This document shows, one piece after another, positions 809 through 48,842 of a stretch of 64,000 bases of DNA (its first letter is position 1; every line of letters begins with the position of its first letter). The notes under the pieces were generated by a model. The model had not been told where the DNA came from. It saw only the letters and a list, made by a program, of their open reading frames with translations, and did not search any database. Source of the DNA: Squalus acanthias (lineage: Eukaryota); contig JASTWF010000110.1 of assembly GCA_030390025.1 (NCBI GenBank), positions 496,001-560,000 of the forward strand. The letters are read 5' to 3'. Both the position numbers and the translations under genes were made by a program.

Positions 809-1558
809 CCTCTGGAAGCAATGTTACTGTGAGTGTCGGTCAGAGAGAAGTGAATGGGACCGTGAACCAGTCTGTCCTTCTCCCCGTCTCCTACTCCACA
901 CCCACTCCCTAGTCCTCTTTAAAGATAGAGTGGAGTTTAATTCCCACAGACACTCCATTAGTGACATTGACCCGATCAAACTGCTCTCCAGACCCTGACA
1001 GACCCGGTTATACCTGTTCAGATTACCAGGTGTTCGCTCCTTCCCACAGGGGGAGAGTCCACATCTACCCAGAGAATGGATCCTTGTTGCTGCGGGATCT
1101 GCAGCCCAGTGACAGCGGCGTGTATGTGATATCTGTTTACAGTGATGGGGACACAACCAGTAAAGGCAATGTGACGTTAACAGTCTATCCCGGGACAGGT
1201 AGGAATTCACAGGCTGATTATTTAACCCATTTAACCCTCAGTGCCCTTTGCTGATAGAGGAACATTATTTAACTGTTACTGTACTTGTCGCTTCGAAACA
1301 AGCTGAATATTGCCAGCAAATTGATAAAGAATGATTAAAGTCTCTTTTTGAATATAATCGGGTTGTTGTAAATGATCACATTTTTGTTGCAGGCACTGAG
1401 AATCCTACCCCGAGCTGCACAGAGCAAGCGGAGACCACCAGACAACCCCCCGACCACCACCACCCGCTCTCCTGCTCCGTGTGGTCATCTTTGGCGCTGT
1501 CACTGTGCTCGGGGCCTGCCTGTACTTGTGTGTGAGGCGGAGATACCGAGCGAAATGA
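809..1558 (+). pseudogene. IgV activating-type receptor family, copy 1 (pseudogene): V exon 809-1198, stalk/TM exon 1393-1558; leader exon lies upstream of the window
   Basis: Canonical ag/gt splice sites and a 390-nt V exon. In-frame TAG at 910-912 (TAC in most paralogues). Also a +2 frameshift in the CAC repeat of exon 3 (166 nt vs 164). Confidence 0.88.
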
Positions 1559-1674
1559 CAGCGGGAGAACTCCACCTACACCCGGAGATCGCGATGTCCA
1601 GGGGTGGGCAACGGTTAGAGAATTCAATCAATCGGAGGTCCTGCTGGACGGCAATAACTTCCTTACAATGTTTC

Positions 1675-2425
1675 AACAACAACAACAATAACTTATTTTT
1701 ATATAGCGCCTTAAACGCTTCACAGGATTGTTATAAAAAAATTGACACCAAGACACATAAGGAGATATTAGGACAGGTGACCAAAAGCTTGGTCAAAGAG
1801 GTGGGTTTTAAGGAGCGTCTTAAAGGAGGAGAGAGAGGTGGAGAAGCGGAGAGGTTTAGGGAAGGAATTCCAGAGCTTAGGGCCCAGGCAGCTGAAGGCA
1901 CAGCCACCAATTGTTGAGTGATTATAATCAGAGCTGCTCAAGAGGGCAGAATTCGAGGAGCGCAGATATCTTGAGGGGTTGTGAGGCTGAAGTCGATTGC
2001 AGTGATATTGAGGGGGAGGCCATGGAGGGATTTGAAAACAAGAATGAGAATTTTAAAATTGAGGTGTTGCTTAATCAGGAGCCAATGTAGGTCAGCGTGC
2101 ACAGGGGAGATGGGCGAACGGGACTTGGTGCGAGTTAGGACACAGATGACCTCAAGTTTACGTAAGGTAGAACATGGAGACCGGCCTGGAGAGCTTTGGA
2201 ACAGTCAAGTCCAGAGGTAACCAAGGCAGATGAGCTGAGACAGGGGCAGAGTCGAGTGATGTTCTGGAGATAGAAATAGGTGGTCTTAGTGATGGCACGG
2301 ATATATGGTCGGAAGCTCATCTCGGGTCAACTATGACACTAACGTTGCAAGCAGTCTTGTTCAGCCTCAGACAGTTGCCAGGGTGAGGGGTGGATTCGGT
2401 GGCTAGGGAACGGCGATTGTTGCGG
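1675..2425 (-). mobile_element. L2-clade LINE 3' fragment (degenerate ORF2 C-terminus plus (TTG)n tail), duplicated with the units
   Basis: Minus-strand peptides SFRPYIRAITKTTYFYLQNITRL... and ...HADLHWLLIKQ.LNFKILILVFKSLHGL are typical of the L2 ORF2 end. Homologues at ~6708-7460, 12055-12780, and shorter tails at 18266-18592, 24955-25282, 35165-35487, 42038-42368, 45288-45598. Confidence 0.8.
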
Positions 2426-3909
2426 GGACCTACATTATAACAGTGACTACACTTCAAAATACTTCCTTGGCTGTAAAACGTGAAAGGCGCTATAGAACTG
2501 CAAGTCTTTCTTTTTTGACCAAACTCAAACATTGCTGGGCCTGTTATTAGGGACAATTTATATAGATGACCAGCCTATGGAATCTGCTGTATTTTGTCCT
2601 CCATTCTGCATTATCTATTCTCATCCATTATTTCAGATCGGGAATAGGAACAGAAACTGCTGGGAATAACCAGCAGGTCGGTCTGTATCTGTAAAGGGAA
2701 ACGACAGGTGACTGGAATTCCCATGTGGATTCTCCCAATCTACTCCCATAACTTCGGCACAAACCCCAGAGAAATGGCGTAAGCAATGTTTTGTGCTGTT
2801 TCTCCGGGGTTTCTGCCGATCTCGCTTCGAAGTTACGGCAGTAGATCGGTATAACCACCTCCCCCCAAAAGAAACTTCTCCCCAGGGTAAACCTTTGAGT
2901 AAAAACCTGCTTCTGAATTGCAAATGGAACTCCAGCGTGCTCGATTCCAGCGTAACTGTGGCGATAGCGCCTCTTTGAATACCTCCGATGTGAATTCCTG
3001 CCTTGTGTCCTGCACACTGCGGTTGTGAGTTGCCTTTCCGACCACTTTGTCTTTTGTCCACAAGCCATTCACTCTGATTTGCACGGCCTGTTCTGTGAAA
3101 TGGGCTTTTCTGCAGCAGATGAGCTGAGACAGGGGCTGAGTCGAGTGATGTTCTGGAGATAGAATCGGTGGTCTCAGTGATGGCACGGATAGATGGTCGG
3201 AAGATCATCTCGGGGTCAAATAGGACACCAAGGTTTAGCCTCCGACAGTTGCCAGGGAGAGGGATGGAGTTGGTGGCTCGGGAATCAGTTATGCAACTCA
3301 CTGCTCATTAACCACACCGACTGTCAGTTGAGACACTGAGCTGCCGATTATACCGGTTACTTGTCCCTGTCTACAAGTGGACTTCAAGTAAAGATAATTA
3401 AAAATGATCTCTGATTTAATGCAGAGTGTGCTGAGCAAATTAAACCCGAGAGGATTGAATTCAGATTGAGTCCCGTCACTGCCAAAGGAACATTGAGACA
3501 CAAACAGCGGGCAAAGTGAGGAGGACAGAAATAATGGCTGGCTGTGGATAAATGTGTAAAGAAACAACTCGGATTTACACCTTTCACAACCTCAGGCCCG
3601 CACAAAGACTTTCACAGCCAATAAAGTGCTTTAAAGTGTAGTCACCGGTTACTGTAAGGAAATGCAGCAGCCAATCTGTGCACAGCAAGATTCCAAGAAT
3701 ACAAATGAGATAAATGACTAAATTGTATTTAGTGATGTTAATTGAGGCGCAATGTACAGAATTGAGATTTGATGTACCGAAATATTATAAAAATAGCAAT
3801 TATTGGACATGGGTAAAGGGCCAATTATTTTCATATAGAAAGAATTTGAAATCTTTAAAAAAAGTCAGTTTCAAACCCAAGTCAGAAGGAGATCAGCCCT
3901 GATGAAAAG

Positions 3910-4504: not shown

Positions 4505-4637
4505 AATTTCGCCACTTTGTTCTGGTCACTTCCGCTGCAAACCCAAACCCTGCATCACATGAGAAACTCTTCCTCCATTTCATTCAGTCCTGCTCGGTGT
4601 CCCGTTACTGTGATATCGGGGTGACCCGGAGCTCACT
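4505..4637 (+). promoter_or_regulatory. Putative proximal promoter of the receptor genes (copy 2 shown): ETS site CACTTCCG 4527-4534, E-box CACATG 4556-4561, PU.1-like CTTCCTC 4569-4575; no TATA
   Basis: Motifs lie 60-115 nt upstream of the ATG and recur upstream of most leaders. The ETS site and E-box persist even in the diverged terminal copy (~48918-48972). Confidence 0.4.
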
Positions 4638-6591
4638 ATGTGCAGGGAAGTAAATCTCTTTAAATTCACCAACATTTACCCTCTCGTCATTTATTTTATT
4701 TCCCTCTCCGGTAAGTTGTTTTCTTTCACTTCCAGTATAAATGTTATTCTATTTCTGAGTTCCCTTTGACTCTGTGTGACTTCTGCTGACTGTGTTTAAT
4801 CAGGGCTGGGGTTCAATCGCTCACTGATCTAAAGTGAATGAAGCTCAGCTCATTCCCGGAGATCTTCAGTCTCATTCAGTCGGGCTCCTGTGAACAGGTA
4901 GATTCCCGCTCACCATCTGCCCTCCAGTTACTGTCAAACACTGTGAGTCACCTGAACCTCTAACTGTAGCTGGGACTTATTAATGAATGAACTGATCTCT
5001 CACAAGTCTTTAATTATTATTTATTAATGTGTCAGATATTCTCGTGTGTATGTTTTATCAAATGTGTAAAATTGGCGGATTCGATCAATTGGATTTCTAC
5101 CAAGTCTTTATTTAATGATTATAACATAGAATTACATACAATTTACAGCACAGAATAGGCCATTTGGCCAAACTGATCTAAGCCGGGGTTTATGCTTCTC
5201 GCGAGCCTGCCCACAATTTATTTACTTCACCTCATCCTAACAACATATCCTTCTATTCCTTTCTCCCTCATGTACTGATCCAGCTTCCCCTTAAATGAAT
5301 CCAGACTATTCACCTCAACTACTCCTTGTGGTAGCTCGTTCCGCATTCTCACCACTCTCTGGGTAAAAATGTTTCTGCTGAATTATTTTTTGGATTTATT
5401 AGAGACTATTTCATTACTAGCGTCTCAAACACTGTTATTATGATCGGGAACACATTGTCTGAAAGGCCGGTTGAAGCAGATTCAACAGTAAGCTTCAAAG
5501 GGGAATTGAATATAGACTTGAAAAGGAAAATTTGCTGGGCTATTGGGAAAGAGCGCGGGAGGGGGACTGATTGGATCGCTCATTCAAAGAGCTAGTACAC
5601 GCACGATGGGCCGAATGGCCTCCTTCCGTGCTGTATGAATCTCTGATTGTATAATTTCGTGCTCTCTGACTGGGCATTTTGTTTATTCTATCAAATTTAT
5701 TCTTTGTTGATGCTGCAGGTATTTTGTGATTTCAAACTCCTGGGATGCTTTATAACCAGAATTCTGAGTAAAGCCCTTTCTGAGGAATTCTGAGCTGTTT
5801 TTTTCCTTTCTGAAGCTGATTTATTGTTTGTATTTTGTTGCAGCCTCTGGAAGTAATGTTACTGTGAGCGTCGGTCAGAGAGAAGTGAAGGGGACCGTGA
5901 ACCAGTCTGTCCTTCTCCCCGTCTCCTACTCCACACCCACTCCCTACTCCACTTTAAAGATAGAATGGTTTTTATTCCCCGGAGACACTCCATTAGTGAC
6001 ACTGACCCGATCAAACTGCTCTCCAGACCCTGACAGACCCGGTTATACCTGTTCGGATTACCAGGTGTTCGCTCCTTCCCACAGGGGGAGAGTCCACATC
6101 TACCCAGAGAATGGATCCTTGTTGCTGCGGGATCTGGAGCCCAGTGACAGCGGCGTGTATGTGATATCTGTTTACAGTGATGGGGACACAACCAGGAAAG
6201 GCAATGTGACGTTAACAGTCTATCCCGGGACAGGTAGGAATTCACAGCCTGATTATTTAACCCATTTAACCCTCAGTGCCCTTTGCTGATAGAGGAACAT
6301 TATTTAACTGTTACTGTACTTGTCGCTTCGAAACAAGCTGAATATTGCCAGCAAATTGATAAAGAATGATTAAAGTCTCCTTTTGAATCTAATCGGTTTG
6401 TTGTAAATGATCACATTTTTGTTGCAGGCACTGAGAATCCTACCCCGAGCTGCACAGAGCAAGCGGAGACCACCAGACAACCCCCCGACCACCCACCCGC
6501 TCTCCTGCTCCGTGTGGTCATCTTTGGCGCTGTCACTGTGCTCGGGGCCTGCCTGTACTTGTGTGTGAGGCGGAGATACCGAGCGAAATGA
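4638..6591 (+). CDS. Single-IgV type I membrane receptor, copy 2, intact, 208 aa; exons 4638-4710, 5844-6233, 6428-6591
   Basis: Leader MCREVNLFKFTNIYPLVIYFISLS|gtaag. V exon ASGSNVTV...VLLPVSY...KIEWFLF...NCSPDPDRPGYTC...RVHIYPENGSLLLRDLEPSDSGVYVISV...NVTLTVYPGT. Exon 3 GTENPTPSCTEQAETTRQPPDHPPALLLRVVIFGAVTVLGACLYLCVRRRYRAK*. Both introns phase 1; 73+390+164=627 nt. Confidence 0.9.
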
Positions 6592-9988: not shown

Positions 9989-11941
9989 ATGTGCAGGGAA
10001 ATAAATCTCTTTAAATTCACCAACATTTTCCCTCTCATCGGTTATTTTATCACCCTCTCCGGTAAGTTGTTTTCTTTCACTTCCAGTATAAATGTAATTC
10101 TATTTCTGAGTTCCCTTTGACTCTGGGTGACTTCTGCTGACTGTGTTTAATCGGGGCTGGGTTTCAATCGCTCAATGATCTAAAGTGAATGAAGCTCAGC
10201 TCATTCCCGGAGATCTTCAGTCTCATTCAGTCGGGCTCCTGTGAACAGGTAGATTCCCGCTCACCATCTGCCCTCCAGTGACTGTCCCACACTGTGAGTC
10301 ACCTGAACCTCTAACTGTAGCTGGGACTTATTAATGAATGAACTGATCTCTCACAAGTCTTTAATTATTATTTATTAACGTGTCAGATATTCTCGTGTGT
10401 ATGTTTTATCAAATGTGTAAAATTGGCGGATTCGATCAATTGGATTTCTACCAAGTCATTATTTAATGATTATAACATAGAATTACATACAATTTACAGC
10501 ACAGAATAGGCCATTTGGCCAAACTTGTCTAAGCCGGGGTTTATGCTTCTCGCGAGCCTGCCCACAATTTATTTACTTCACCTCATCCTAACAACATATC
10601 CTTCTATTCCTTTCTCCCTCATGTACTGATCCAGCTTCCCCTTAAATGAATCCAGACTATTCACCTCAACTACTCCTTGTGGTAGCTCGTTCCGCATTCT
10701 CACCACTCTCTGGGTAAAAATGTTTCTGCTGAATTATTTTTTGGATTTATTAGAGACTATTTCATTACTAGCGTCTCAAACACTGTTATTATGATCGGGA
10801 ACACATTGTCTGAAAGGCCGGTTGAAGCAGATTCAACAGTAAGCTTCAAAGGGGAATTGAATATAGACTTGAAAAGGAAAATTTGCTGGGCTATTGGGAA
10901 AGAGCGCGGGAGGGGGACTGATTGGATCGCTCATTCAAAGAGCTAGTACACGCACGATGGGCCGAATGGCCTCCTTCCGTGCTGTATGAATCTCTGATTG
11001 TATAATTTCGTGCTCTCTGACTGGGCATTTTGTTTATTCTATCAAATTTATTCTTTGTTGATGCTGCAGGTATTTTGTGATTTCAAACTCCTGGGATGCT
11101 TTATAACCAGACTCCTGAGTAAAGCCCTTTCTGAGGAATTCTGAGCTGTTTTTTTCCTTTCTGAAGCTGATTTATTGTTTTAATTTGTTGCAGCCTCTGG
11201 AAGTAATGTTACTGTGAGCGTCGGTCAGAGAGAAGTGAATGGGACCGTGAACCAGTCTGTCCTTCTCCCCGTCTCCTACTCCACACCCACTCCCTGCTCC
11301 ACTTTAAAGATAGAATGGTTTTTATTCCCCGGAGACACTCCATTAGTGACACTGACCCGATCAAACTGCTCTCCAGACCCTGACAGACCCGGTTATAACT
11401 GTTCAGATTACCAGGTGTTCGCTCCTTCCCACAGGGGGAGAGTCCACATCTACCCAGAGAATGGATCCTTGTTGCTGCGGGATCTGGAGCCCAGTGACAG
11501 CGGCGTGTATGTGATATCTGTTTACAGTGATGGGGACACAACCAGGGAAGGGAATGTGACGTTAACAGTCTATCCCGGGACAGGTAGGAATTCACAGCCT
11601 GATTATTTAACCCATTTAACCCTCAGTGCCCTTTGCTGATAGAGGAACATTATTTAACTGTTACTGTACTTGTCGCTTCGAAACAAGCTGAATATTGCCA
11701 GCAAATTGATAAAGAATGATTAAAGTCTCCTTTTGAATATAATCGGTTTGTTGTCAATTATCACATTTTTGTTGCAGGCACTGAGAATCGTACCCCGAGC
11801 TGCACAGAGCAAGCGGAGACCACCAGACAACCCCACGACCACCCACCCGCTCTCCTGCTCCGTGTGCTCATCTTTGGCGCTGTCACTGTGCTCGGGGCCT
11901 GCCTGTACTTGTGTGTGAGGCGGAGATACCGAGCGAAATGA
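9989..11941 (+). CDS. Single-IgV receptor, copy 3, intact, 208 aa; exons 9989-10061, 11194-11583, 11778-11941
   Basis: Same exon lengths and splice sites; open frame throughout; TM ALLLRVLIFGAVTVLGACLYLCV; extra Cys in the BC loop (TPCST). Confidence 0.9.
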
Positions 11942-14040: not shown

Positions 14041-15988
14041 ATGTGCAGGGAAATAAATCTCTTTAAATTCACCAACATTTTCCCTCTCATCAATTATTTA
14101 ATCACCCTCTCCGGTAAGTTGTTTTCTTTCACTTCCAGTATAAATGTAATTCTATTTCTGAGTTCCCCCTGACTCTGTGTGACTTCTGCTGACTGTGTTT
14201 AATCGGGGCTGGGGTTCAATCGCTCACTGATCTAAAGTGAATGAAGCTCAGCTTATTCCCGGAGATCTTCAGTCTCATTCAATCGGGCTCCTGTGAACAG
14301 GTAGATTCCCGCTCACCATCTGCCCTCCAGTTACTGTCCCACACTGTGAGTTACCTGAACCTCTAACTGTAGCTGGGACTTATTAATGAATGAAACGATC
14401 TCCCACACGTCTTTAATTATTATTTATTAACGTGTCAGATATTCTCGTGTGTATGTTTTATCAAATGTGTAAAATTTGCGGATTGGATCAATTGATTTCT
14501 ACCAAGTCTTTATTTAATGATTATAACATAGAATTACATACAATGTACAGCACAGAATAGGCCATTTGGCCAAACTGGTCTAAGCCGGGTTTTATGCTTC
14601 TCGCGAGCCTGCCCACAATCTATTTACTTCACCTCACCCGAACAACATATCCTTCTATTTCTTTCTCCCTCATGTACTTATCCAGCTTCCCCTTAAATGC
14701 ATCTATACTATTCACCTCAACTACTCCTTGTGGTAGCTCGGTCCACATTCTCACCACTCTCTGGGTAAAAATGCTTCACCTGAATTCTTTTTTTGGATTT
14801 AATAGTGACTGTTTCATTACTAGCGTCTCAAATGCTGTTATTATGGTCTGGAACACATTGTCTGGAAGGGTGGTGGAAGCAGTTTCAACAGTGAGCTTCA
14901 AAGGGGAATAGACTTGGAAAGGAACATTTGCAGGGCTATTGGGAAAGAGCGGGGGAGTGGGACTGATTGGATCGCTCATTCACAGAGCTAGTACACGCAC
15001 GATGGGCCGAATGGCCTTCTTCTGTGCTGTATGAATCTCTGATTGTATAATTTCGTGCTCTCTGACTGGTCCTTTTGTTTATTCTGTCAAATTTATTCTT
15101 TGTTGATGCTGCAGGTATTTTGTAATTTGAAACTCCTGGGATGCTTTATAACCAGAATTCTGAGTAAAGCCCTTTCTGAGGAATTCTAAGCTGTTTTTTT
15201 TCCTTTCTGAAGCTGATTTATTGTTTTTATTTTGTTGCAGCCTCTGGAAGCCGTGTTACTGTGAGCGTCGGTCAGACAGAAGTGAAGGGGACCGTGAACC
15301 AGTCTGTCCTTCTCCCCGTCTCCTACTCCACACACACTCCCTACTCCACTTTAAAGATAGAGTGGACTTTATTCCCCGGAAATACTTCATTAGTGAGACT
15401 GACCCGAGCAAACTGCTCTCCAGACCCTGACAGACCCGGTTATAACTGTTCAGATTACCAGCTTGACGGTCCATCCCACACGGGGCGAGTCCACATCTAC
15501 CCAGAGAATGGATCCTTGTTGCTGCGGGATCTGGAGCCCAGTGACAGCGGCGTGTATGTGATATCTGTTTACAGTGATGGGGACACAACCAGGAAAGGCA
15601 ATGTGACGTTAACAGTCTATCCCGGGGCAGGTAGGAATTCACAGTCTGATTATTTAACCCATTTAACCCTCAGTGCCCTTTGCTGATAGAGGAACATTAT
15701 TTAACTGTTACTGTACTTGTCGCTTCGAAACAAGCTGAATATTGCCAGCAAATTGATAAAGAATGATTAAAGTCTCTTTTTGAATCTAATCGGGTTGTTG
15801 TAAATGATCACATTCTTGTTGCAGACACTGAGAATCCTATCCCGAGCTGCACAGTGCAAGCGGAGACCACCAGACAACCCCCCGACCACCCACCCGCTCT
15901 CCTGCTCCGTGTGGTCATCTTTGGCGCTGTCAGTGTGCTCGGGGCCTGCCTGTACTTGTGTGTGAGGCGGAGATACCGAGCGAAATGA
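14041..15988 (+). CDS. Single-IgV receptor, copy 4, intact, 208 aa; exons 14041-14113, 15241-15630, 15825-15988
   Basis: Kozak-like cACCATG, canonical splice sites, open frame; divergent face residues (EWTLFPGNTSLVRL, DYQLDGPSHTGRV). Confidence 0.9.
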
Positions 15989-18707: not shown

Positions 18708-21184
18708 TCATTTCGCTCGGTATCTCCGCCTCACACACAAGTACAGGCAGGCCCCGAGCACAGTGACAGCGCCAAAGATGACCACACGGAGCAGGAGAGC
18801 GGGTGGGTGGTCGGGGGGTTGTCTGGTGGTCTCCGCTTGCTTTGTGCAGCTCGGGGTAGGATTCTCAGAGTCTGCAACAAGCTTCTGATCATTTACAACA
18901 ACCCGATTAGATTCAAAAGGAGACTTTAATCATTCTTTATCAATTTGCTGGCAATATTCAGCTTGTTTTGAAGCGACAAGTACAGTAACAGTTAAATAAT
19001 GTTCCTCTATCAGCCAAGGACACTGAGGGTTAAATGGGTTAAATAATCAGACTGTGAATTCCTACCTGTCCCGGAATAGACTGTTAACGTCACATTGCCT
19101 TTAGTGGTTGAGTCCCCAGCACTGTAAACAGTTATCACATACACGCCGCTGTCACTGGGCTGCAGATCCCGCAGAAACAAGGATCCATTCTCTGGGTAGA
19201 TGTGGACTCTCCCCCTGTGGGAAGGAGTGAACCCCGAGTAATCTGAACAGTTATAACCGGGTCTGTCAGGGTCTGGAGAGCAGTTTGATCGGGTCAGTGT
19301 CACGAATGGAGTGTCTCCGGGGAATAAAAACCACCTTATATTTAAAGTGGAGACGGGGAGAAGGACAGACTGGTTCATGGTCCCCTTCACTTCTCTCTGA
19401 CCGACGCTCACAGTAACACGGCTTCCAGAGGCTGCAACAAAATAAAAACAATAAATCAGCTTCAGAAAGGAATAAAACAGCTTAGATTTCCTCAGAAAGG
19501 GTTTTACTCAGAAGTCTGGTTATAAAGCATCCCAGGAGTTTGAAATCACAAAATACCTGCAGCATCAACAAAGAATAAATTTGATAGAATAAACATAACG
19601 ACCAGTCAGAGAGCTTGAAATTATACAATCAGAGATTCATACAGCACAGAAGGAGGCCATTCGGCCAATCGTGCGTGTACTAGCTCTTTGAAAGAACTAC
19701 CCCATAAGTGCTAATTCCACGCCACTTCACAATAGCCCTCCAAATTTTCCTTTCCAAGTCTATAGTCAATTCCCCTTTGAAGTTACTGTTGAAACTCCTT
19801 CCACCGCCCTTTCAGACAATGTGTTCCAGACCATAATAACAGCATTTGAGACATTAGTAATGAAATAGTCACTAATAAATCCAAAAAATAATTCAGGAGA
19901 AACATTTTTACCCAGAGAGTGGTGAGAATGTGGAACGAGCTACCACAAGGAGTAGTTGAGGTGATTAGTCTGGATGCATTTAAGGGGAAGCTGGATCAGT
20001 ACATGAGGGAGAAAGGAATAGAAGGATATGTTGTTAGGGTGAGGTGAAGTAAATAGATTGTGGGCAGGCTCGCGAGGAACATAAAACCCGGCTTAGACCA
20101 GTTTGGCCAAATGGCCTATTCTGTGCTGTAAATTGTATGTCATTCTATGTTATAATCATTAAATAATGACTTGGTAGAAATCAATTGATCCAATCCGCCA
20201 ATTTTACACAATTGATAAAACATACACACGAGAATATCTGACACATTAATAAATAAATAATAATTAATGACTTGTGGGAGATCGGTTCTTTCATTAATAA
20301 GTCCCAGTCTAGAGTTAGAGGTTCAGGTAACTCACAGTGTGGGACAGTAACTGGAGGGCAGATGGTGAGCGGGAATTTACCTGTTCACAGGAGCCTGAAT
20401 GAATGAGACTGAAGATCTCAGGGAATGAGTTGAGCTTCATTCACTTTAGATCATGATGCGGAGAATACTTCAGCAGTCAAGGACATTCAGCCTCGGATCT
20501 GCGGGTTAGCGTTCTCCAAGGCGGCCTTCGAGACACACAACAATGCAAAATCATCGAGCAGAAACTGATAACCAAGTTCCGCACCCATGAGGATGGCCTC
20601 AATAGGGATATCGGGTTCATGTGATGATATAGAACGTGACTCGACATCGTTGTCTGTCTTTCCAGTTTTTTTTAAAAAACACAAAAAAAACAAACCAAAA
20701 AAACACAAAAAATAAAAGTTAAAAGCTCAACTGTAGACAGCAGGATTTGACACGTTGGACCCCCAGTGTCCCATCTCATTATCTTGGCTGTGCTCTGGTG
20801 TGTCTTTGATGTAAGGCCTCCCTGAAAGATTGTATCTCTGCAGACAAATTGATTTTTGTGTTTATATACAGTGTAATATTGTAGATTCCTTCATTGTACC
20901 TGTACCTGACGAAGGGGCAACAGCTCCGAAAGCTTGTAATTTAAAAAAAATCTGTTGGACTATAACCTGGTATTGTGCGACTTCTCACTTTAGATCAGTG
21001 AGCGATTGAACCCCAGCCCCGATTAAACACAGTCAGCAGAAGTCACACAGAGTCAGGGGGAACTCAGAAATAGAATTACATTTATACTGGAAGTGAAAGA
21101 AAACAACTTACCGGAGAGGAAAATAAAATAACTGATGAGAGGGAAATTGTTGGTGAATTTAAAGAGATTTATTTCCCTGCACAT
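18708..21184 (-). CDS. Single-IgV receptor, copy 5, intact, 200 aa with an 8-aa BC-loop deletion; exons 21184-21112, 19431-19066, 18871-18708
   Basis: Canonical splice sites; V exon 366 nt (in-frame loss of YSTPTPYS); TM Arg retained; Penelope fragment in intron 1. Confidence 0.85.
20454..20984 (+). mobile_element. 5'-truncated Penelope-like element (GIY-YIG endonuclease C-terminus, 3' UTR, hammerhead-bearing terminus) in intron 1 of copy 5
   Basis: Encodes EYFSSQGHSASDLRVSVLQGGLRDTQQCKIIEQKLITKFRTHEDGLNRDIGFM*. Flanked by the direct repeat tcactttagatca (20441-20453, 20985-20997). Confidence 0.82.
20900..20940 (+). ncRNA. Minimal type I hammerhead ribozyme motif of a Penelope-like element
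   Basis: UAC-CUGACGA-A-GGGGC aaca GCUCC-GAAAGCU-U-GUA: core boxes, helix II, palindromic helix III and UAC/GUA helix I. Confidence 0.65.
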
Positions 21185-23949: not shown

Positions 23950-24044
23950 ATAATCGGCAGGTCAGTGTCTCAACTAACACTCGGTGTGGTTAATGAGCAG
24001 TGAGTTGCACAACCTAGAACAACTGATGGTCGAGGGTCAGAGGT

Positions 24045-30127: not shown

Positions 30128-31683
30128 CTGTCCCGGGATAGACTGTTAACGTCACATTGCCTTTCCTGGTTGTGTTCCCATCACTGTAAACAGATATCAC
30201 ATACACGCCGCTGTCACTGGGCTGCAGATCCCGCAGCAACAAGGATCCATTCTCTGGGTAGATGTGGACTCTCTCACTGTGGGAAGGAGCGAACCCCCGG
30301 TAATCTGAACAGTTATAACCGGGTCTGTCAGGGTCTGGAGAGCAGTTTGATCGGGTCAGTATCACTAATGGACTGTCTCCGGCGATTAAACCCCAGTCTA
30401 TCTTTAAAATCGAGTAGGGAGTGGGTGTGGAATAGGAGACAGTGAGAAGGACAGACTGGTTCACGGTCCCCTTCACTGCTCTCTGACCGACGCTCACAGT
30501 AACACGGCTTCCAGAGGCTGCAATAAAATAAAAACAATAAATCAGCTTCAGAAAGGAAAAAAAAAACACCTTAGAATTGCTTAGAAAGGGTTTTACTCAG
30601 GAGTCTGGTTACGAAGCATTCGAGGTGTTTGAAATCACAAAATACCTGCAGCATCTACAAAGAACAAAATTATAAAGAATAAACATAACGACGAGTCAGA
30701 GAGCATGAAATTATACAATCAGAGATTGATACAGCATAGAAGGAGGCCATTCGGCCCATTCTGCGTGTACTAGCTCTTTGAAAGATCGATCCAATCTCCC
30801 TCTTTCCCAATAGCCTTTCAAATCTTTCCGTTTGAAGTCTGTATTCAATTCCCCTTTGAAGCTCACTGTTGAAACTGCTTCCATTGCCATTTTAGACAAT
30901 GTGTTCCAGACCATAATAACAGCATTTGAGACGGTAGTAATTAAATAGTCTCTAATAAATACAAAAAAATAGAAATCAGGAGTAACATTTTTACCCAGAG
31001 AGTGGTGAGAAGGTGGAAGGAGCTACCACAAGGAATAGTTGAGGTGAATAGTATAGATGCATTTAAGGGGAAGCTGGATAAATACATGAGGGAGAAAGGA
31101 ATAGAAGGATATGTTGTTCGGGTGAGGTGAAGTAAATAGATTGTGGGCAGGCTCGTGAGGAGCATAAACCCCGGTTTAGACCAGTTTGGTCAAATGGCCT
31201 ATTCTGTGCTGTAAATTCTATGGTAGAGATCAATTGTACAATCCGCCAATTTTACACATTTGATAAAACATACACACGAGAATATCTGACACATTAATAA
31301 ATAATAAATAAAGACTTGTGAGAGATCAGTTCATTCATTAATAAGTCCCAGTTACAGTTAGAGGTTCAGGTAACTCACAGTGTCGGACAGTAACTGGAGG
31401 GCAGATGGTGAGCGGGAATCTACCTGTTCACAGGAGCCCGACTGAATGAGACTGAAGGTCTGAGGGAATGAGCCGAGCTTCATTCACTTTAGATCAGTGA
31501 GCGATTGAACCCCAGCCCCGATTAAACACAGTCAGCAGAAGTCACACAGAGTCAAGGGGAACTCAGAAATAGAATTACATTTATACTAGAAGTGAAAGAA
31601 AACAACTTAACGGAGAGGGAAATAAAATAACTGCTGAGAGGGAAATTGTTGGAGAATTTAAAGAGATTTATTTCCCTGCACAT
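30128..31683 (-). pseudogene. IgV receptor copy 7 (probable pseudogene): leader 31683-31611 with donor GT>TT, open V exon 30517-30128, TM exon deleted
   Basis: Leader is followed by ttaag instead of gtaag. Intron 2 joins directly to the L2 tail at ~29950, so exon 3 is absent. Confidence 0.83.
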
Positions 31684-35602: not shown

Positions 35603-37500
35603 TCATTTCGCTCGGTATCTCCGCCTCACACACAAGTACAGGCAGGTCCCGAGCACAGTGGCAGCGCCAAAGATGACCACACGGAGCAGGGGAGCGGCTG
35701 GTGGGTGTTCGGGGGGTTGTCTGGTGGTCTCCGCTTGCTCTGTGCAGCTCGGGGTAGGATTCTCAGTGCCTGCAACAAGAATGTGATCATTTACAACAAC
35801 CCGATTAGATTCAAAAGGAGACTGTTAATCATTCTTTGTCAATTTGCTGGCAATATTCAATTTGTTTCGAAGCGACAAGTACAGTAACAGTTAAATAATG
35901 ATCCTCTAACAGAAAGAGCACTGAGGGTTAAATGGTTTAAATAATCAGCCTGTGAATTCCTACCTGTCCCGGAATAGACTGCTAACGTAACATTGCCTTT
36001 ACTGGTTGTGTCCCCATCACTGTAAACAGATATCACATACACGCCGCTGTCACTGGGCTGCAGATCCCGCAGCAACAAGGATCCATTCTCTGGGTAGATG
36101 TGGACTCTCCCCCTGTGGGAAGGATTGTCCCGCTGGTAATCTGAACAGGTATAACCGGGTCTGTCAGGGTCTGGAGAGCAGTTTGATCGGGTCAGTATCA
36201 CTAATGGAGTGTCTCCGGGGAATAAAACCCAGTCTATCTTTAAAGTGGAGTAGGGAGTGAGTGTGGAGTAGGAGACGGGGAGAAGGACAAACTGGTTCAC
36301 GGTCCCCTTCACTTCTCTCTGACATCCGATCACAGTAACATTGCTTCCAGAGGCTGCAACAAATTAAAACAATAAATCAGTTTCAGAAAGGACAAAAAAA
36401 AGCTTCGAATTCCTTAGAAAGGGTTTTACTCAGGAGTCTGGTTATAAAGCAGCCCAGGAGTTTGGTGGAATAAATATAAGGACCAGTCAGAGAGCATGAA
36501 ATTATACAATCAGAGATTCATACAGCACAGAAGGAGGCCATTCGGCCCATTGTGCCTGTGCCGGCTCTTTGAATGAGCAATCCAATCAGTCCCACTCCCC
36601 CGCTCTTTCCCAATAGCCCTGCAAATACTTTCCTTTCCAAGTCTATATTCAATTCCCCATTGAAGTTTACTGTTGAATCTGCTTCCACCGCCCTTTCAGA
36701 CAATGTGTTCCAGATCATAATAACAGTATTTGAGACGTTAGTAATTAAATAGTGAGTAATAAATCCAAAAAATAATTCAGGAGAAACATTTTTACCCAGA
36801 GACTGGTGAGAATGTGGAACTCACTGTCACAAGGAGTAGTTGAGGTGAATAGTATAGATGCATTTAAGGGGAAACTAGATAAATACATGAGGGAGAAAAA
36901 AGTAGAAGGATATGTTGTTAGGGTGAGGTGAAGTACATAGATTGTGGGGAGGCTAAGACCAGTTTGGCCAAATGGCATCTTCTGTAATGTAAATTGTATG
37001 TAATTCTATGTCTTAATCATTAAGTAAAGAGTTCATAGAGATCAATTGATCCAATCTGCCAATTTTACACATTTAATAAAACATACACGCGAGAATATCT
37101 GACACATAAATAAAAAAATAATAATTAAAGACTTGTGAGAGATGACTTCATTCATTAATAAGTCCCAGCTACAGTCAGAGGTTCAGGTAACTCACAGTGT
37201 GGGGCAGTAACTGGAGTGCAGATGGTGAGCGGGAATCAACCTGTTCACAGGAGCCCGACTGAATGAGACTGAAGATCTCAGGGAACGAGTTGAGCTTCAT
37301 TCACTTTAGATCAGTGAGCGATTGAACCCCAGCCCCGATTAAAGACAGTCTGCAGAAGTCACACAGAGTCAAGGGGAACTCAGAAATAGAATTACATTTA
37401 TACTGGAAGTGAAAGAAAACAACTTACCGGAGAGGAAAATAAAATAATTGATGAAAGGGAAAATTTTGATGAATTTAAAGAGATTTATTTCCCTGCACAT
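35603..37500 (-). CDS. Single-IgV receptor, copy 8, intact, 209 aa; exons 37500-37428, 36353-35964, 35769-35603
   Basis: Canonical splice sites; exons of 73, 390 and 167 nt; TM APLLRVVIFGAATVLGTCLYLCV, tail RRRYRAK*. Confidence 0.9.
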
Positions 37501-42484: not shown

Positions 42485-42648
42485 TCATTTCGCTCGGTAT
42501 CTCCGCCTCACACACAAGTACAGGCAGGTCCCGAGCACAGTGACAGCGCCAAAGATGACCACACAGAGCAGGAGAGCGGGTGGGTGGTCGGGGAGTTGTC
42601 TGGTGGTCTCCGCTCGCTCTGTGCAGCTCGGGGTAGGATTCTCAGTGT
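42485..42648 (-). pseudogene. Orphan stalk/TM exon (copy 9); acceptor, V exon and leader lost at an inversion breakpoint; TM Arg>Cys
   Basis: 164-nt exon-3 homologue. Its 5' edge joins directly to plus-strand intron-1 sequence (gtgtaaaattgg). CGT>TGT at the TM Arg codon. Confidence 0.85.
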
Positions 42649-44426: not shown

Positions 44427-45172
44427 CCTCTGGAAGCCGTGTTACTGTGAGTGTCGGTCAGAGAGAAGTGAAGGGGACCGTGAACCAGTCTGTCCTTCTC
44501 CCCGTCTCCTACTCCACACCCACTCCCTACTCCACTTTAAGGATAGAGTGGGGTTTAATCCCCACAGACACTCCATTAGTGACACTGACCCGATCAAACT
44601 GCTCTCCAGACCCTGACAGACCCGGTTATAACTGTTCGGATTACCGGGGGTTCGCTCCTTCCCACACGGGGAGAGTCCACATCTACCCAGAGAATGGATC
44701 CTTGTTGCTGCGGGATCTGGAGCCCAGTGACAGCGGCGTGTATGTGATATCTGCTTACAGTGCTGGGGCACAACCAGTAAAGGCAATGTGACGTTAACAG
44801 TCTATCCCGGGACAGGTAGGAATTCACAGGCTGATTATTTAAACCATTTAACCCTCAGTGCTCTTTCTGTTAGAGGAACATTATTTAACTGTTACTGTAC
44901 TTGTCGCTTCGAAACAAGCTGAATATTGCAAATTGATAAAGAATGATTAACAGTCTCCTTTTGAATCTAATCGGGCTGATGTAAATGATCAGATTCTTGT
45001 TGCAGGCACTGAGAATCCTACCCCGAGCTGCACAGAGCAAGCGGAGACCACCAGACAACCCCCCGACCACCACCCACCCGCTCTCCTGCTCCGCGTGGTC
45101 CTCTTTGGCGCTGTCAGTGTGCTCGGGGCCTGCCTGTACTTGGGTGTGAGGCGGAGATACCGAGCGAAATGA
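44427..45172 (+). pseudogene. IgV receptor copy 10 (pseudogene inside an inverted segment): V exon 44427-44815, TM exon 45006-45172
   Basis: V exon 389 nt (-1 at ~44769, GCTGGGGCACAA). No in-orientation leader upstream because intron 1 is truncated at ~42645. Confidence 0.86.
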
Positions 45173-46450: not shown

Positions 46451-47216
46451 AGGCCCTGTATAACTGTAGTACGACATCCTTGCTCCTGTACTCAAATACT
46501 CTTGCAATGAAGGCCAACATACCATTTGCCTTCCTAACTGTTTGCTGCACCTGCATGTTTGCTTTCAGTGACTGGTGTACAAGGACATCCAGGTCCCTCT
46601 GTACATCAACATTTCCCAATCTATCACCATTTAAATAATACTCTGCCTTTCTGTTTTTCCTACCGAAGTGGATAACTTCATATTTATCCACATTATACTG
46701 CATCTGCCATGTATTTGCCCACTCACTCAACTTGTCTAAATTGCCTTGAAGCCTCTTTGCATCCTCTTCACAACTCACAATCCCACCTAGTTTCGTGTCA
46801 TCAGCAAACTTGGAAATATTACATTTGATTCCCTCATCCAAATCATTGATATATATTGTAAATACATGGGACCCAAGCACTGATCCCTGCGGTACCCCAC
46901 TAGCCACCGCCTGCCACCCCAAAAAAGACCCATTTATTCCTACTCTCTGTTTCCTGTCTGTTAACCAATTTTCAATCCATGCCAGTATATTACCCCCAAT
47001 CCCATGTGCTTCAATTTTGCACACTAACCTCTTATGTGGGACTTTATCCAAGGCCTTTTGAAAATCCAAATACACCACTTCCACTGGTTCTCCCTTATCT
47101 ATTCTACCAGTTACATCCTCAAAAAACTCCATTCGGTTTGTCAAACACGATTTCCCTTTCATAAATCCATGTTGACTTTGTCTAATCCCGTTGATATTTA
47201 CCAAGTGATATTTTAT
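46451..47216 (-). mobile_element. CR1 LINE, third paralogous copy of the 22.4/32.8-kb insertion, 3' part deleted
   Basis: Same 5' junction; the 276-aa ORF contains YLDFQKALDKVPH, GVPQGSVLG, KFADDTKL. Confidence 0.9.
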
Positions 47217-48770
47217 AGCGGTTACTTGTCCCTGTCTACAAGTCGACTTTAAATACAGAAAGAACAAATGAACTCTCATTTAATGCCGAGTGTGCTGAAC
47301 AAATTAAACCCGAGAGGATTGAATTCAGATTGAGTCCCGTCACTGCCATAGGAACATTGAGACACAAACAGCGGGCAAAGTGAGGAGGACAGAAATAATG
47401 GCTGGCTGTGGATAAATGTGTAAAGAAACAATTCGGATTTACACCTTTCACAACCTCAGGACGGCACGAAGTCTTTCACAGCCAATAAAGTACTTTAAAG
47501 TGTAGTCACCGGTTAGTGTAAGGAAATGCAGCCGCCAATCTGTGCACAGCAAGATTCCAGGAATAGCAATGAGATAAATGACTACATTGTTTTTAGTGAT
47601 GTTAATTGAGGCGTAAATGTGCAGAATTGAGATTTGATGTACGGAGATATTATAAAAATAGCAATTATTGGACATGGGTAAAGGGGCAATTATTTTTATA
47701 TCGAAAGAATTTGAAACCTTAAAAAAAAATCTGTTTGTAAACCCAAGTCAGAAGGACATCAACCTGATGAAAAGCCGCGTCTGTCCAATGTAATCCCCGC
47801 CCTCAGCATCTCTTCTGTCTTTTTGGTCTCTCCCGATAACCAAGCTTGGGGCAGGAGATCTTAAAATAAACTATTGAAATGAATAAAGGGTCTGTTCGAT
47901 GTTATTATCTGAACCAGATGAAATGGTTCATGGGACAACAGCCCTGCTCAGGAAGTAATGGGTCAGTGTGCCCGGGGCGGTGGGATCTCCCCGGGGCACA
48001 TGGAGCGGGGACTGGAGAAATAAATAGATGGAAATAGATGGGGATGGCGAGAGAAGGAGATGGCGATGGACCCGGGCCCAGGCCTCTGTCGGTCTGCACA
48101 CTCTGCCAGTTATTTTACTGATATCTCAAACATACCCACTCGAACTTTTTTTGAAGAAACTACAGTGAGTAAAGGCAAAATTCATCATTTTAAATGTATG
48201 ATTTTTACATTTCTATGTTAATGATCTGATTTTGGGCTTTTTTCGATTTGATTTTGAAATGATTTCGCCACTTTGTTCTGGTCACTTCCACTGCAAACTC
48301 AAACCCTGCCTCACATGAGAAACTCTTCCTCCAGTTCATTCAGTCCTGCTCGGTGTCCCGTTACTGTGATATCATACACACGTGTAAAACATACACACGC
48401 GAATATCTGACACATTAATAAATAATAATTAAAGACTTGTGAGAGATCAATGAATTGATTAATAAGTCCCAGCTACAGTTAGAGGTTCAGGTAACTCACA
48501 GTGTAAGTCCCAGCTACAGTTAGAGGTTCAGGTAACTCACAGTGTGGGACAGTAACTGGAGGGCAGATGGTGAGCGGGAATCTACCTGTTCACAGGAGCC
48601 CGACTGAATGAGACTGAAGATCTCAGGGAATGAGCTGAGCTTCATTCACTTTAGATCAGTGAGCGATTGAACTCCAGCCCCGATTAAACAGTCAGCAGAA
48701 GTCACACAGAGTCAGGGGGAACTCAGAAACAGAGTAACATTTATGCTAGAAGTGAAAGAAAAAATCTTAC

Positions 48771-48842
48771 CGGAGAGGGTTTAAAATAACTGATGAAACG
48801 CAAAATGTTGGTGAATTTAAAGAGATTTATTTCTCTGCACAT
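48771..48842 (-). pseudogene. Orphan leader exon (probably belonging originally to copy 10), 72 nt, 1-nt deletion
   Basis: ATGTGCAGAGAAATAAATCTC...CCCTCTCCG|gtaag. Its intron breaks at ~48385, almost exactly where the inverted intron-1 piece at 42645 begins. Confidence 0.8.

What the first reader, a model, noticed from the sequence alone, without database searches (positions are those of the whole stretch)
809..48842. Expanded cluster of an apparently undescribed shark activating immune-receptor family (single disulfide-less IgV + TM arginine + motif-less tail)
Seen: nine V exons in ~48 kb; five splice into intact ~208-aa leader-V-stalk-TM-RRRYRAK* proteins via phase-1 introns, and the rest are pseudogenes or fragments. 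The ORF track misses this because leader and TM exons must be spliced. Known: a basic TM residue plus a short tail defines adaptor-coupled activating receptors (NKp30, NKp46, LILRA, FcalphaRI, OSCAR), and V domains lacking the B-F disulfide typify CD2/SLAM/CEACAM N domains. NKp30, CD300/TREM-type receptors and NITRs keep the canonical cysteines, so this combination fits none that I can name. Inference: a lineage-specific, germline-diversified leukocyte receptor cluster under birth-and-death evolution, probably auto-annotated at best as HEPACAM/CEACAM/SLAM-like.
Basis: partly seen in the sequence, partly recalled or inferred. Interest (0 to 1): 0.92.

Follow-up and report, generated by a model that had tools for sequence, protein, structure and literature searches.

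The report
Shark activating-type paired Ig receptor cluster
This stretch of shark DNA holds a cluster of small one-domain immune-receptor genes that look like the "on-switch" partners of an "off-switch" receptor found from sharks to birds, a family that databases list but nobody seems to have named or studied.

Summary
Nine V-set exons lie in 48 kb. Five copies read as intact leader / V / stalk-TM genes of 200-209 aa, with a TM arginine and the tail RRRYRAK. Four copies and two orphan exons are broken.

This is neither a shark-only nor a purely activating family.
- Close relatives are RefSeq "uncharacterized proteins" in at least 15 elasmobranch species.
- More distant relatives occur in amphibians, turtles, alligator and birds, including chicken LOC771657.
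- Most relatives carry an uncharged TM and a long tail with ITIM/ITSM-like tyrosines. A few share the window's Arg-TM exon.
- In three species the Arg-TM and ITIM forms have 91-98% identical V domains, against 52-84% between species. An AU test rejects a single Arg-TM clade at p = 1e-69.

So the window holds an expanded activating arm of an old paired-receptor family. The family is distinct from bona fide CEACAM1, HEPACAM and SLAM.

Expression and splicing were not shown. The reads call found no junctions and no depth on the TM exon. Adaptor coupling is inferred. Seven of eight literature searches bore on the family and none found a description. The scan has no look-alike on other DNA.

The parts
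809..1198 (+). Copy 1 V exon, pseudogene (in-frame stop); its leader lies before the window start
1393..1558 (+). Copy 1 stalk-TM exon, frameshifted
4638..4710 (+). Copy 2 leader exon (ATG, 73 nt, GT donor)
5844..6233 (+). Copy 2 V exon, intact, phase 1 at both ends
   Evidence: three contigs end exactly at 6233
6428..6591 (+). Copy 2 stalk-TM-tail exon (..ALLLRVVIFGAVTVLGACLYLCVRRRYRAK, stop 6589-6591). GTGAGG at 6565-6570 is a possible internal donor.
9989..10061 (+). Copy 3 leader exon
11194..11583 (+). Copy 3 V exon, intact
11778..11941 (+). Copy 3 stalk-TM exon, intact
14041..14113 (+). Copy 4 leader exon
15241..15630 (+). Copy 4 V exon, intact
15825..15988 (+). Copy 4 stalk-TM exon, intact
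21112..21184 (-). Copy 5 leader exon
19066..19431 (-). Copy 5 V exon, open, with an in-frame 24-nt deletion
18708..18871 (-). Copy 5 stalk-TM exon, intact
27274..27346 (-). Copy 6 leader exon
25755..26143 (-). Copy 6 V exon, frameshifted (389 nt)
25398..25560 (-). Copy 6 stalk-TM exon, frameshifted
31611..31683 (-). Copy 7 leader exon; donor is TT instead of GT
30128..30517 (-). Copy 7 V exon, open, but its TM exon is deleted (intron-2 homology ends at 29954, downstream homology resumes at 29941)
37428..37500 (-). Copy 8 leader exon
35964..36353 (-). Copy 8 V exon, intact
35603..35769 (-). Copy 8 stalk-TM exon, intact, with a 3-nt insertion
42485..42647 (-). Orphan stalk-TM exon: no AG acceptor, Arg replaced by Cys
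44427..44815 (+). Copy 9 V exon, frameshifted; no leader upstream
45006..45172 (+). Copy 9 stalk-TM exon, open
48771..48842 (-). Orphan leader exon, 72 nt (frameshift)

Best explanation
The window holds a tandem, partly inverted array of about 5-kb units. The array is the expanded activating arm of an old paired-receptor family.

Each intact gene (copies 2, 3, 4, 5 and 8) has three exons and encodes:
- a signal peptide;
- one glycosylated IgV domain that lacks the B-F disulfide but has an invariant CX10C pair on the neighbouring C' and C'' strands;
- a short stalk;
- a TM helix with an arginine five residues from its outer end;
- a 7-residue basic tail.

The partner is an ITIM/ITSM-tail gene with the same leader and V domain. 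It lies outside this window. In other elasmobranchs its V domain is kept almost identical to that of the Arg-TM form, most likely by gene conversion.

Inferred mechanism: both forms bind the same ligand through the V domain. The ITIM form recruits SH2 phosphatases. The Arg-TM form has no signalling tail of its own, so it pairs through the arginine with an acidic residue of an ITAM adaptor dimer (CD3-zeta/FcR-gamma type or DAP12 type) and activates the leukocyte.

What is shown and what is inferred:
- Shown: exon anatomy, homology, and co-evolution of the V domains in other species.
- Inferred: expression, splicing in this species, adaptor coupling, ligand and cell type.
For: Anatomy and splice signals.

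Fold: V-set by Pfam. AlphaFold pLDDT 89.8. Generic IgV neighbours by Foldseek and VIA-align (best VCBP3 V domain, Z 16.9).

Same architecture elsewhere: RefSeq models P0001 and P0002 (Hemiscyllium, Chiloscyllium; tail SRRCREKCQ(Q/R)EL) and P0059 (Leucoraja).

The Arg-TM exon is an old, separate exon lineage:
- tblastn of P0055 (S. canicula) hits the window TM exons at 62-68% identity over the 7 of 11 HSPs that span 45-47 aa, E 1e-10 to 4e-14.
- P0002 hits at 43-53%, and P0059 at 31-32% (E 0.002-0.004).
- ITIM-type stalk, TM and tail parts give no comparable hit for 13 of the 14 ITIM-type queries.
- The pattern LR..G.(V/L)(T/A)V(L/F)G..L is shared from shark to skate.

Paired evolution:
- V identity between the Arg-TM and ITIM forms of one species is 92.3% (Hemiscyllium), 97.7% (C. 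punctatum) and 91.3% (S. canicula).
- Between species the identity is 52-84%.
- The tree pairs them by species (support 100/96 and 99/93).
- The AU test rejects one clade of the 9 Arg-TM rows (p = 1e-69).

The leader of the window copies resembles the leaders of the ITIM genes of Heterodontus, Carcharodon and Heptranchias.

Selection:
- Between copy 2 and copies 3, 4, 5 and 8, introns carry 19 indels, none a multiple of 3. Exons carry 2 indels, both in frame.
- V-exon dN/dS is 0.66-1.84, above 1 in 7 of 10 pairs.
- The TM core and tail are nearly invariant.

Three contigs end exactly at the V donor 6233.
Against: - No junction 4710^5844 or 6233^6428 was seen. There was no depth on 6428-6591 in any of the 4 runs laid. 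All four runs are only guessed to be RNA.
- The three contigs that stop at 6233 run on for 31, 151 and 249 letters that do not lie on the TM exon.
- The indel comparison is biased, because the copies were chosen for being intact.
- dN/dS near 1 also fits relaxed constraint.
- The S. canicula model P0055 leaves the shared sequence right after YLC and adds 85 unrelated residues. The window has GTGAGG at that spot (6565-6570), so a longer isoform cannot be excluded.
- The arginine is close to the outer boundary and could be interfacial.
- A 2014 survey found no FcR-gamma homologue in sharks (PMC4016189, passages).
- The ITIM partner of this species was not seen. It is not in the window.
Confidence: 0.62

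Rival explanations
1. Non-signalling decoys. The short-tail copies reach the surface on their own, bind the ligand of the ITIM receptor (or a pathogen adhesin) and compete with it without coupling to an adaptor. The arginine would then be only an interfacial stop-transfer residue.
For: The arginine sits five residues from the outer end of a 23-residue hydrophobic run. FcR-gamma was reported absent from sharks (PMC4016189). Terrapin CEACAM1-derived N-TM genes without ITIM are read as decoys in PMC13278318 (passages).
Against: The arginine and the surrounding TM pattern are conserved between sharks and a skate in a dedicated exon lineage, whereas the ITIM forms use an uncharged TM. A decoy needs no special TM. 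The only TM exon that lost the arginine is an orphan without an acceptor.
Confidence: 0.15
2. A mostly dead, recently amplified segmental array. The open copies are young duplicates not yet hit by disabling mutations, and they are not expressed.
For: 4 of 9 copies plus two orphan exons are broken. Exon and intron divergence are similar: 0.026-0.056 against 0.014-0.084. dN/dS is about 1. There is no read depth on the TM exon. The array lies beside LINE fragments and satellites.
Against: From intron indel rates, about 0.5-4 frameshifting indels would be expected per 627-nt coding sequence on the paths from copy 2 to copies 3, 4, 5 and 8. None is seen, and both exon indels are in frame. Splice sites, the ATG, the arginine and the tail are kept in five copies. 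Orthologous Arg-TM genes are modelled in four other species.
Confidence: 0.12
3. Bona fide members of the CEACAM family: cartilaginous-fish CEACAM1/CEACAM3-type paired receptors. On this reading it is a known family under another label.
For: The N-type IgV lacks the canonical disulfide. CEACAM N domains recur among PDB sequence hits (E 6e-4 to 0.06; 2.6e-7 for CEACAM6 with the profile). One ray relative is named 'CEACAM3-like' (P0029). CEACAM homologues were reported from little-skate ESTs (PMC3628338 and PMC4079198, passages). I could not compare those ESTs.
Against: - CEACAM is not the best hit by profile: CD276 scores 1.6e-8 and JAML 7.1e-8.
- It is not the best by fold either: no CEACAM chain is among the 50 VIA rows or the Foldseek rows listed.
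- The family is intact in chicken (LOC771657) and pigeons. PMC13278318 reports there a pseudogenised or absent CEACAM1, and bird CEACAM1 carrying IgC domains.
- Shark proteins labelled PSG22-like or CEACAM3-like are a different multi-V family that shares only the E-F motif.
- Activation would go through a TM arginine, not an ITAM-like tail.
Confidence: 0.08
4. One reading: a stand-alone, shark-lineage-specific family made only of activating receptors.
For: Within the 64-kb window only Arg-TM type exons occur.
Against: ITIM-tail members with the same leader and V domain exist in 15 or more elasmobranch species and in tetrapods.
Confidence: 0.03

Closest known systems
RefSeq 'uncharacterized protein' models with the Arg-TM exon: Scyliorhinus canicula LOC119976513 (XP_038672986), Hemiscyllium ocellatum LOC132832679 isoform X2, a Chiloscyllium punctatum model (P0002), Leucoraja erinacea LOC129716097
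   Same: Leader, cysteine-less V domain with CX10C, stalk, and TM with the LR..G..V.G pattern. The tail is short in three of the four. V identity to copy 2 is 59-73%.
   Different: Each appears as a single annotated model, not an array of nine. Tails are 12-27 aa instead of 7. The S. canicula model continues for 85 unrelated residues.
ITIM/ITSM-tail members of the same unnamed family (for example Mustelus asterias XP_078073544, S. canicula LOC119975690, Heterodontus, Carcharodon, Pristis, Mobula; chicken LOC771657; turtle, alligator, caecilian and bullfrog models)
   Same: The same V domain signature: invariant W41, C58, C69 and SLLLRD..DSGVY in 28 of 28 rows of A1. In sharks the leader is the same too.
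   Different: Uncharged TM and a 70-115 aa tail with (L/I)TY(S/C/T)LL and a C-terminal (T/I/V)(I/V)Y motif. These exons are absent from the window.
CEACAM1 / CEACAM3-type paired receptors
   Same: N-type IgV without the canonical disulfide. An inhibitory ITIM/ITSM partner. N-domain exons kept alike between paired members. Single-N-domain members exist (PMC5112662 abstract; PMC13278318 passages).
   Different: The activating members signal through their own ITAM-like tail, not a TM arginine. CEACAM1 has IgC domains. Sequence and fold similarity are only generic. The taxon distribution differs.
Adaptor-coupled activating receptors with a TM arginine (NKp46, LILRA, Fc-alpha-RI, OSCAR, GPVI, chicken CHIR-A). 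Features are recalled, except that PMC4016189 mentions the charged TM residue of Fc-alpha-RI and CHIR-AB1.
   Same: Arginine in the outer part of the TM, a short tail without motifs, paired with ITIM relatives, and clustered birth-and-death genes.
   Different: Those ectodomains are C2-type Ig domains with canonical disulfides. There is no sequence relationship.
V-type paired receptors SIRP-alpha/beta, PILR-alpha/beta, CD300A/C, TREM, and teleost NITR and NILT (recalled; NILT from the PMC3022915 abstract)
   Same: A single or leading V domain, with ITIM forms set against forms that have a charged TM.
   Different: They keep the canonical B-F cysteines. Most use a lysine and DAP12. PILR (Z 13.4-13.8) is no closer in fold than other IgV domains.
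CD2/SLAM family and HEPACAM/HEPACAM2
   Same: CD2/SLAM N-terminal V domains lack the disulfide (CD48 Z 14.2; weak SLAMF5/6 and CD48 hits). Tetrapod members carry TxYxxI motifs. Auto-annotation sometimes uses HEPACAM names.
   Different: Those families have V plus C2 ectodomains. No C2 exon is present here.

Membership tests
Unnamed V-set family (elasmobranch 'uncharacterized' / chicken LOC771657 / 'HEPACAM2-like') | V domain with Val/Ile in place of the B and F cysteines; invariant W41, C58...C69 (CX10C) and S-L-L-L-R-D..D-S-G-V-Y | tested here: met
   Alignment A1: these columns are invariant in 28 of 28 rows. Profile hits reach E 1e-50 to 1e-145.
Unnamed V-set family (elasmobranch 'uncharacterized' / chicken LOC771657 / 'HEPACAM2-like') | Single V, then stalk-TM, with no C-type Ig domain | tested here: met
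   Only leader, V and TM exons are present in each roughly 2-kb gene. Relatives of 200-330 aa have one V domain.
Paired activating/inhibitory receptors (functional kind) | Activating and inhibitory forms share near-identical ectodomains within a species | tested here: inconclusive
   Met in Hemiscyllium (92.3%), C. punctatum (97.7%) and S. canicula (91.3%). The ITIM partner of the window's own species was not seen.
Adaptor-coupled activating receptors (functional kind) | Basic residue inside the TM segment | tested here: met
   Arg is the 5th residue of a 23-residue hydrophobic run in 8 of 9 TM exons. It is conserved in four orthologous models.
Adaptor-coupled activating receptors (functional kind) | Short cytoplasmic tail without ITIM, ITSM or ITAM | tested here: met
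   The tail RRRYRAK then a stop occurs in 9 of 9 TM exons. A possible internal donor at 6565-6570 leaves a longer isoform open.
Adaptor-coupled activating receptors (functional kind) | Physical association with an ITAM adaptor (FcR-gamma, CD3-zeta or DAP12) | not testable with these tools
   Needs co-expression and co-precipitation. PMC4016189 reports no FcR-gamma homologue in sharks.
Adaptor-coupled activating receptors (functional kind) | Expression as a spliced mRNA in leukocytes | tested here: inconclusive
   4 runs of uncertain type, no junctions, zero depth on the TM exon, and three contigs ending at the V donor.
CEACAM | N-terminal IgV-like domain without the canonical disulfide | tested here: met
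CEACAM | Specific sequence or fold kinship to CEACAM N domains above other V-set families | tested here: not met
   Profile against PDB: CD276 1.6e-8 and JAML 7.1e-8 rank ahead of CEACAM6 at 2.6e-7. No CEACAM chain is in the 50 VIA rows or in the Foldseek rows listed.
CEACAM | Orthology to CEACAM1 (same taxon distribution; IgC A/B domains) | tested here: not met
   The family is intact in chicken and pigeons. PMC13278318 reports a CEACAM1 pseudogene or loss there, and 4-6 IgC domains in bird CEACAM1. No IgC exon is in the window.
CEACAM | Location at the conserved CEACAM locus (LIPE, CNFN, PAFAH1B3 ...) | not testable with these tools
CD2/SLAM | V + C2 ectodomain | tested here: not met
   No second Ig exon.
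HEPACAM/HEPACAM2 | V + C2 ectodomain and a long cytoplasmic tail | tested here: not met
   Single V and a 7-aa tail. The HEPACAM names are auto-annotation only.
NKp30 / CD300 / TREM / NITR | Canonical B-F cysteine pair in the V domain | tested here: not met
   Val and Ile stand at these positions in all open V exons.

The most novel reading that the evidence does not exclude
This is the activating arm of the oldest paired-receptor system recognised so far. It would be an unnamed single-V family whose inhibitory and Arg-TM genes have been kept alike by gene conversion since before sharks and skates split. The family survives in amphibians and sauropsids and is not seen in mammals or teleosts in these searches. 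Its arginine would signal through an ITAM adaptor in animals reported to lack FcR-gamma. That would mean either CD3-zeta used outside the TCR or a shark adaptor not yet described.
Probability: 0.3. Interest if true: 0.72.

Novelty: new member of a known kind. Interest (0 to 1): 0.52.

Why it matters
Paired activating and inhibitory receptors (KIR, LILR, SIRP, CD300, PILR, CEACAM1/3, NITR, CHIR) are central to innate recognition. Almost nothing of the kind has been described in cartilaginous fish.

Here a whole family is sitting in RefSeq as 'uncharacterized protein', from sharks to chicken. It has an unusual V domain (no core disulfide, a C'-C'' staple). In sharks and skates it also has a clear split between ITIM-tail genes and Arg-TM genes whose ligand-binding domains co-evolve.

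If the family is expressed, it gives a concrete handle on three open points:
- how old the paired-receptor logic is;
- which ITAM adaptors sharks use;
- what ligand or pathogen drives the expansion seen in this genome (five open and four broken copies in 48 kb).

Tried and rejected
RNA evidence. One sequencing-run run found only 7 low-share runs, none on record as RNA. The single read-laying run gave no junctions and no depth on the TM exon, so the splice model stays untested. The letters that follow 6233 in three contigs could not be seen.

A search for more Arg-TM exon relatives with P0055 residues 150-205 found only P0055 itself.

Family naming led nowhere specific:
- Pfam gives only V-set, and nothing for the TM exon.
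- PDB sequence, PDB profile, Foldseek, VIA-align and the ESM Atlas give generic IgV neighbours.

Rejected classifications, with reasons in Membership tests: CEACAM1 orthology, the shark 'PSG22-like/CEACAM3-like' family, SLAM/CD2, HEPACAM, and NKp30/CD300/TREM/NITR.

Literature. Eight searches were run.
- Seven bore on the family and found no description of it.
- The eighth (adaptor gene names with 'shark') returned only unrelated papers.
- Only open PMC papers and bioRxiv were searched. Subscription papers are not covered, among them the skate MDIR and shark NKp30 work that I only recall.
- I did not open any supplements. Table S3 and File S1 of PMC3628338 (skate ESTs FF598979.1, EE990618.1, FF601895.1) could show whether part of this family has already been filed under CEACAM. 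So could the supplementary tables and figures of PMC13278318.

Earlier scan notes gave no look-alike sequence. One note of an ITIM+ITSM V receptor elsewhere in this genome (s1-887988) is an untested lead.

The test for selection on the reading frame is weakened because the copies were picked for being intact. dN/dS rests on 2-7.5 synonymous differences per pair.

Full report
**What is in the window**

This finds nine V exons, nine stalk-TM exons and eight leader exons between 809 and 48842. Copies 1-4 and 9 lie on the + strand and copies 5-8 on the - strand.
- All nine V exons have the same acceptor and donor context (..gcag| and |gtagga) and are phase 1 at both ends.
- All eight leaders begin with ATG. 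Seven are 73 nt and seven have a GT donor.
- All nine TM exons end in RRRYRAK and a stop. Eight keep an arginine five residues into a 23-residue hydrophobic run.

The five open copies and the four broken copies with two orphan exons are listed exon by exon under the observation check and parts. Introns and flanks are as similar between copies as the exons, so the unit of duplication is the whole gene of about 5 kb plus its spacer.

**What the domain is**

The V exon is a V-set domain (PF07686, E 1.7e-10). The TM exon has no Pfam match.

With an alignment of 28 relatives, AlphaFold gives a confident model (pLDDT 89.8, pTM 0.83). Its neighbours are generic IgV domains:
- Foldseek: CAR D1, VSIG4, VCBP3, TIGIT, PD-L1, SCN4B.
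- VIA-align: VCBP3 V domain at Z 16.9 over 124 residues, then a plateau of Z 13-15. That plateau includes CD48 but no CEACAM chain among the 50 rows shown.

In the HMMER alignment to sodium-channel beta-4, Val and Ile stand where the B- and F-strand cysteines would be. Two cysteines, C58 and C69, are invariant in all 28 aligned sequences. In the model they lie opposite each other on the neighbouring strands 49-60 and 67-75. A C'-C'' disulfide is a reasonable inference, but I could not measure it.

**Relatives: not a shark-only, activating-only family**

I did not make or search the joined 208-aa model.

The V exon alone finds 23 proteins among 41 candidates in the 71-226 aa length range:
- three elasmobranch 'uncharacterized proteins' at 58-64% identity;
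- bird proteins of about 190-224 aa, some labelled 'HEPACAM family member 2-like'.

A profile search without a length limit finds 1772 proteins at E <= 1e-3 and 67 at E <= 1e-30. The closest to copy 2 are longer proteins:
- S. canicula XP_038672986 (72%) has the same Arg-TM.
- Mustelus asterias XP_078073544 (71%) has an uncharged TM and an 82-residue tail with LTYSFL and ETIYAL.
- The same ITIM/ITSM-like tail recurs in many other species: Hemiscyllium, Chiloscyllium, Stegostoma, Heterodontus, Carcharodon, Cetorhinus, Heptranchias, S. torazame, Pristis, Narcine, Mobula and Amblyraja.

A second profile search gave 147 hits among 8000 scored candidates, of which 120 are listed. It adds chicken LOC771657 and many other birds including fowl and pigeons, turtles, alligator, a caecilian and a bullfrog. 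None of the named rows is a mammal or a teleost. That is not proof of absence, because the candidates were capped. Tetrapod long forms carry TIYARI followed by (V/T)VYTSI or TEYASI. Nearly all names are 'uncharacterized protein'.

**The paired-receptor pattern**

The ITIM-type TM and tail exons are not in the window. The Arg-type stalk-TM exon of S. canicula, C. punctatum and, weakly, Leucoraja does match the window's TM exons. The TM pattern around the arginine is shared. The Arg-TM exon is therefore an old, separate exon lineage.

The V domains tell a different story. Arg-TM and ITIM forms of the same species share near-identical V domains, far closer than the same type compared between species (figures under Best explanation). 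In an IQ-TREE of 31 V domains the Arg-TM forms sit beside the ITIM form of their own species or genus, and the AU test rejects a single clade for the nine Arg-TM rows. I had seen the pairwise identities before running that test.

The window's leader also resembles the leaders of the ITIM genes of Heterodontus, Carcharodon and Heptranchias.

An old activating TM exon combined with V exons that track the inhibitory partner is the signature of paired receptors homogenised by gene conversion. That signature is described for CEACAM1 and its partners (PMC5112662 abstract; PMC13278318 passages).

**Is the array alive?**

- Comparing copy 2 with copies 3, 4, 5 and 8, introns carry 19 indel events, none a multiple of three. 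Exons carry two, of 24 and 3 nt.
- By intron rates, roughly 0.5 to 4 frameshifts per coding sequence would be expected on these paths. This argues for selection on the reading frame. The test is biased, because I chose the copies for being open.
- Substitutions are not constrained. V-exon dN/dS is 0.66-1.84, above 1 in 7 of 10 pairs, and dN is often at or above intron distance.
- 35 of 129 V positions vary among five copies. They concentrate in the A strand, the BC and CC' loops and the C''-D region. Strands D to F are almost invariant, with 1 of 29 positions varying.
- The TM core and tail are nearly identical in all copies.

This fits a diversifying receptor, but relaxed constraint cannot be excluded.

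**RNA evidence is weak and partly awkward**

The run search found seven runs with 5-9% of the sampled words, none on record as RNA. I laid four of them on 4500-6700.
- No junction 4710^5844 or 6233^6428 appears.
- Depth is zero on 5684-5905 and on 6276-6700, which includes the whole TM exon, in all four runs.
- Three contigs (X1 record 8, X2 record 16, X3 record 24) stop matching exactly at 6233, the V donor. They run on for 31, 151 and 249 letters that were not placed on the stretch.
- One contig (X4 record 32) reads through the donor to 6259.
- The 107 letters of X1 record 8 are identical only to copy 2 among the window copies. The X2 and X3 contigs carry a variant (6106G) that none of the nine copies has.

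My reading is that a paralogue outside the window, plausibly the ITIM gene, is expressed and uses the same donor. This is a guess.

Contigs that match 4500-4674 and 4784-5016 at about 93-95% do not respect the exon borders and remain unexplained.

The S. canicula RefSeq model departs from the shared TM sequence right after YLC, where the window has GTGAGG (6565-6570). An alternative donor inside the TM exon is therefore possible. Its 85 extra residues carry no ITIM-like motif.

**Mechanism**

Most likely (about 0.6) the open copies are activating counterparts of the ITIM receptor.
- They would bind the same ligand through the V domain.
- They have no signalling tail.
- They would couple through the TM arginine to an acidic residue in an ITAM adaptor dimer.

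That arginines near the outer end of the TM pair with FcR-gamma or CD3-zeta, and mid-membrane lysines with DAP12, is established knowledge that I recall. PMC4016189 mentions the charged TM residue of Fc-alpha-RI and CHIR-AB1. The same paper reports that no FcR-gamma homologue was found in sharks (passages), so the adaptor is open.

The rivals are a non-signalling decoy (0.15), a largely dead array (0.12) and true CEACAM membership (0.08, a matter of classification rather than function).

**Comparison with known families**

By kind, this is a paired activating/inhibitory Ig-like receptor system, as KIR, LILR, SIRP, PILR, CD300, NITR, CHIR and CEACAM1/3 are. By descent, it belongs to none of them on the tests I could run.
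- CEACAM N domains are not the best sequence or fold match.
- The family is intact in chicken and pigeons. There CEACAM1 is reported dead or missing, and bird CEACAM1 has IgC domains.
- The shark proteins labelled PSG22-like or CEACAM3-like are a different tandem-V family that shares only the E-F strand motif.
- SLAM/CD2 and HEPACAM have a C2 domain.
- NKp30, CD300, TREM and NITR keep the canonical cysteines.

Whether the little-skate ESTs called CEACAM homologues in PMC3628338 and PMC4079198 belong to this family I could not check.

**Novelty and verdict**

Seven searches of open PMC papers and bioRxiv bore on the family and found no description of it or of LOC771657. An eighth search was uninformative. 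Gene models exist in RefSeq, so the genes are not hidden in other species, but they are unnamed.

I rate this a new member of a known kind. It is of moderate interest because:
- it documents paired receptors with concerted V-domain evolution in cartilaginous fish;
- the family reaches as far as birds;
- this genome has an unusual expansion of the activating arm.

The main gap is expression.

Noticed in passing
window 49678-53622: 78-bp minisatellite, about 50 copies, 85% matches. It reads as a Cys/Pro-rich ORF (49570-50214) but has no Pfam match.
   Followed up: partly
window 57131-64000: 25-bp satellite, about 274 copies, running to the end of the window. The receptor array therefore abuts satellite DNA.
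   Followed up: no
window 46452-47279 (-), also 22697-23116 (+) and 38981-39403 (+): LINE reverse-transcriptase fragments between the receptor copies (RVT_1, E 2.7e-22, for the first). The others are RT-like by their translations only.
   Followed up: partly
window 5240-5680 and the same place in intron 1 of every copy: An interspersed repeat with contig depth of 10^4 in all four runs laid. It has no Rfam match.
   Followed up: no
window 4500-4674 and 4784-5016: Contigs from three or four runs match these stretches at about 93-95%. One covers the 5' flank plus the first 37 nt of the leader ORF; the other is part of intron 1. Both leave the window sequence away from exon borders. Unexplained.
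   Followed up: no
window 6565-6570 (and the same place in the other TM exons): GTGAGG inside the TM exon, at the point where the S. canicula RefSeq model P0055 departs from the shared sequence. It is a possible alternative donor.
   Followed up: partly
proteins P0240, P0247, P0249 (S. canicula, Chiloscyllium): RefSeq isoforms of the ITIM gene in which the V exon is joined straight to the cytoplasmic exons, skipping the stalk-TM exon.
   Followed up: no
proteins P0078, P0093, P0077 (S. torazame, Heterodontus, Pristiophorus): Shark proteins labelled 'PSG22-like' or 'CEACAM3-like' consist of three to five tandem cysteine-less V-like domains with tyrosine-motif tails. They are a separate family sharing only the E-F strand motif with the one studied here.
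   Followed up: partly
window 6451-6453 and the same place in other TM exons: An unpaired cysteine in the stalk (..PTPSCTEQ..) is kept in all nine window TM exons. It is Ser in S. canicula and Tyr in Hemiscyllium. It could make disulfide-linked dimers.
   Followed up: no
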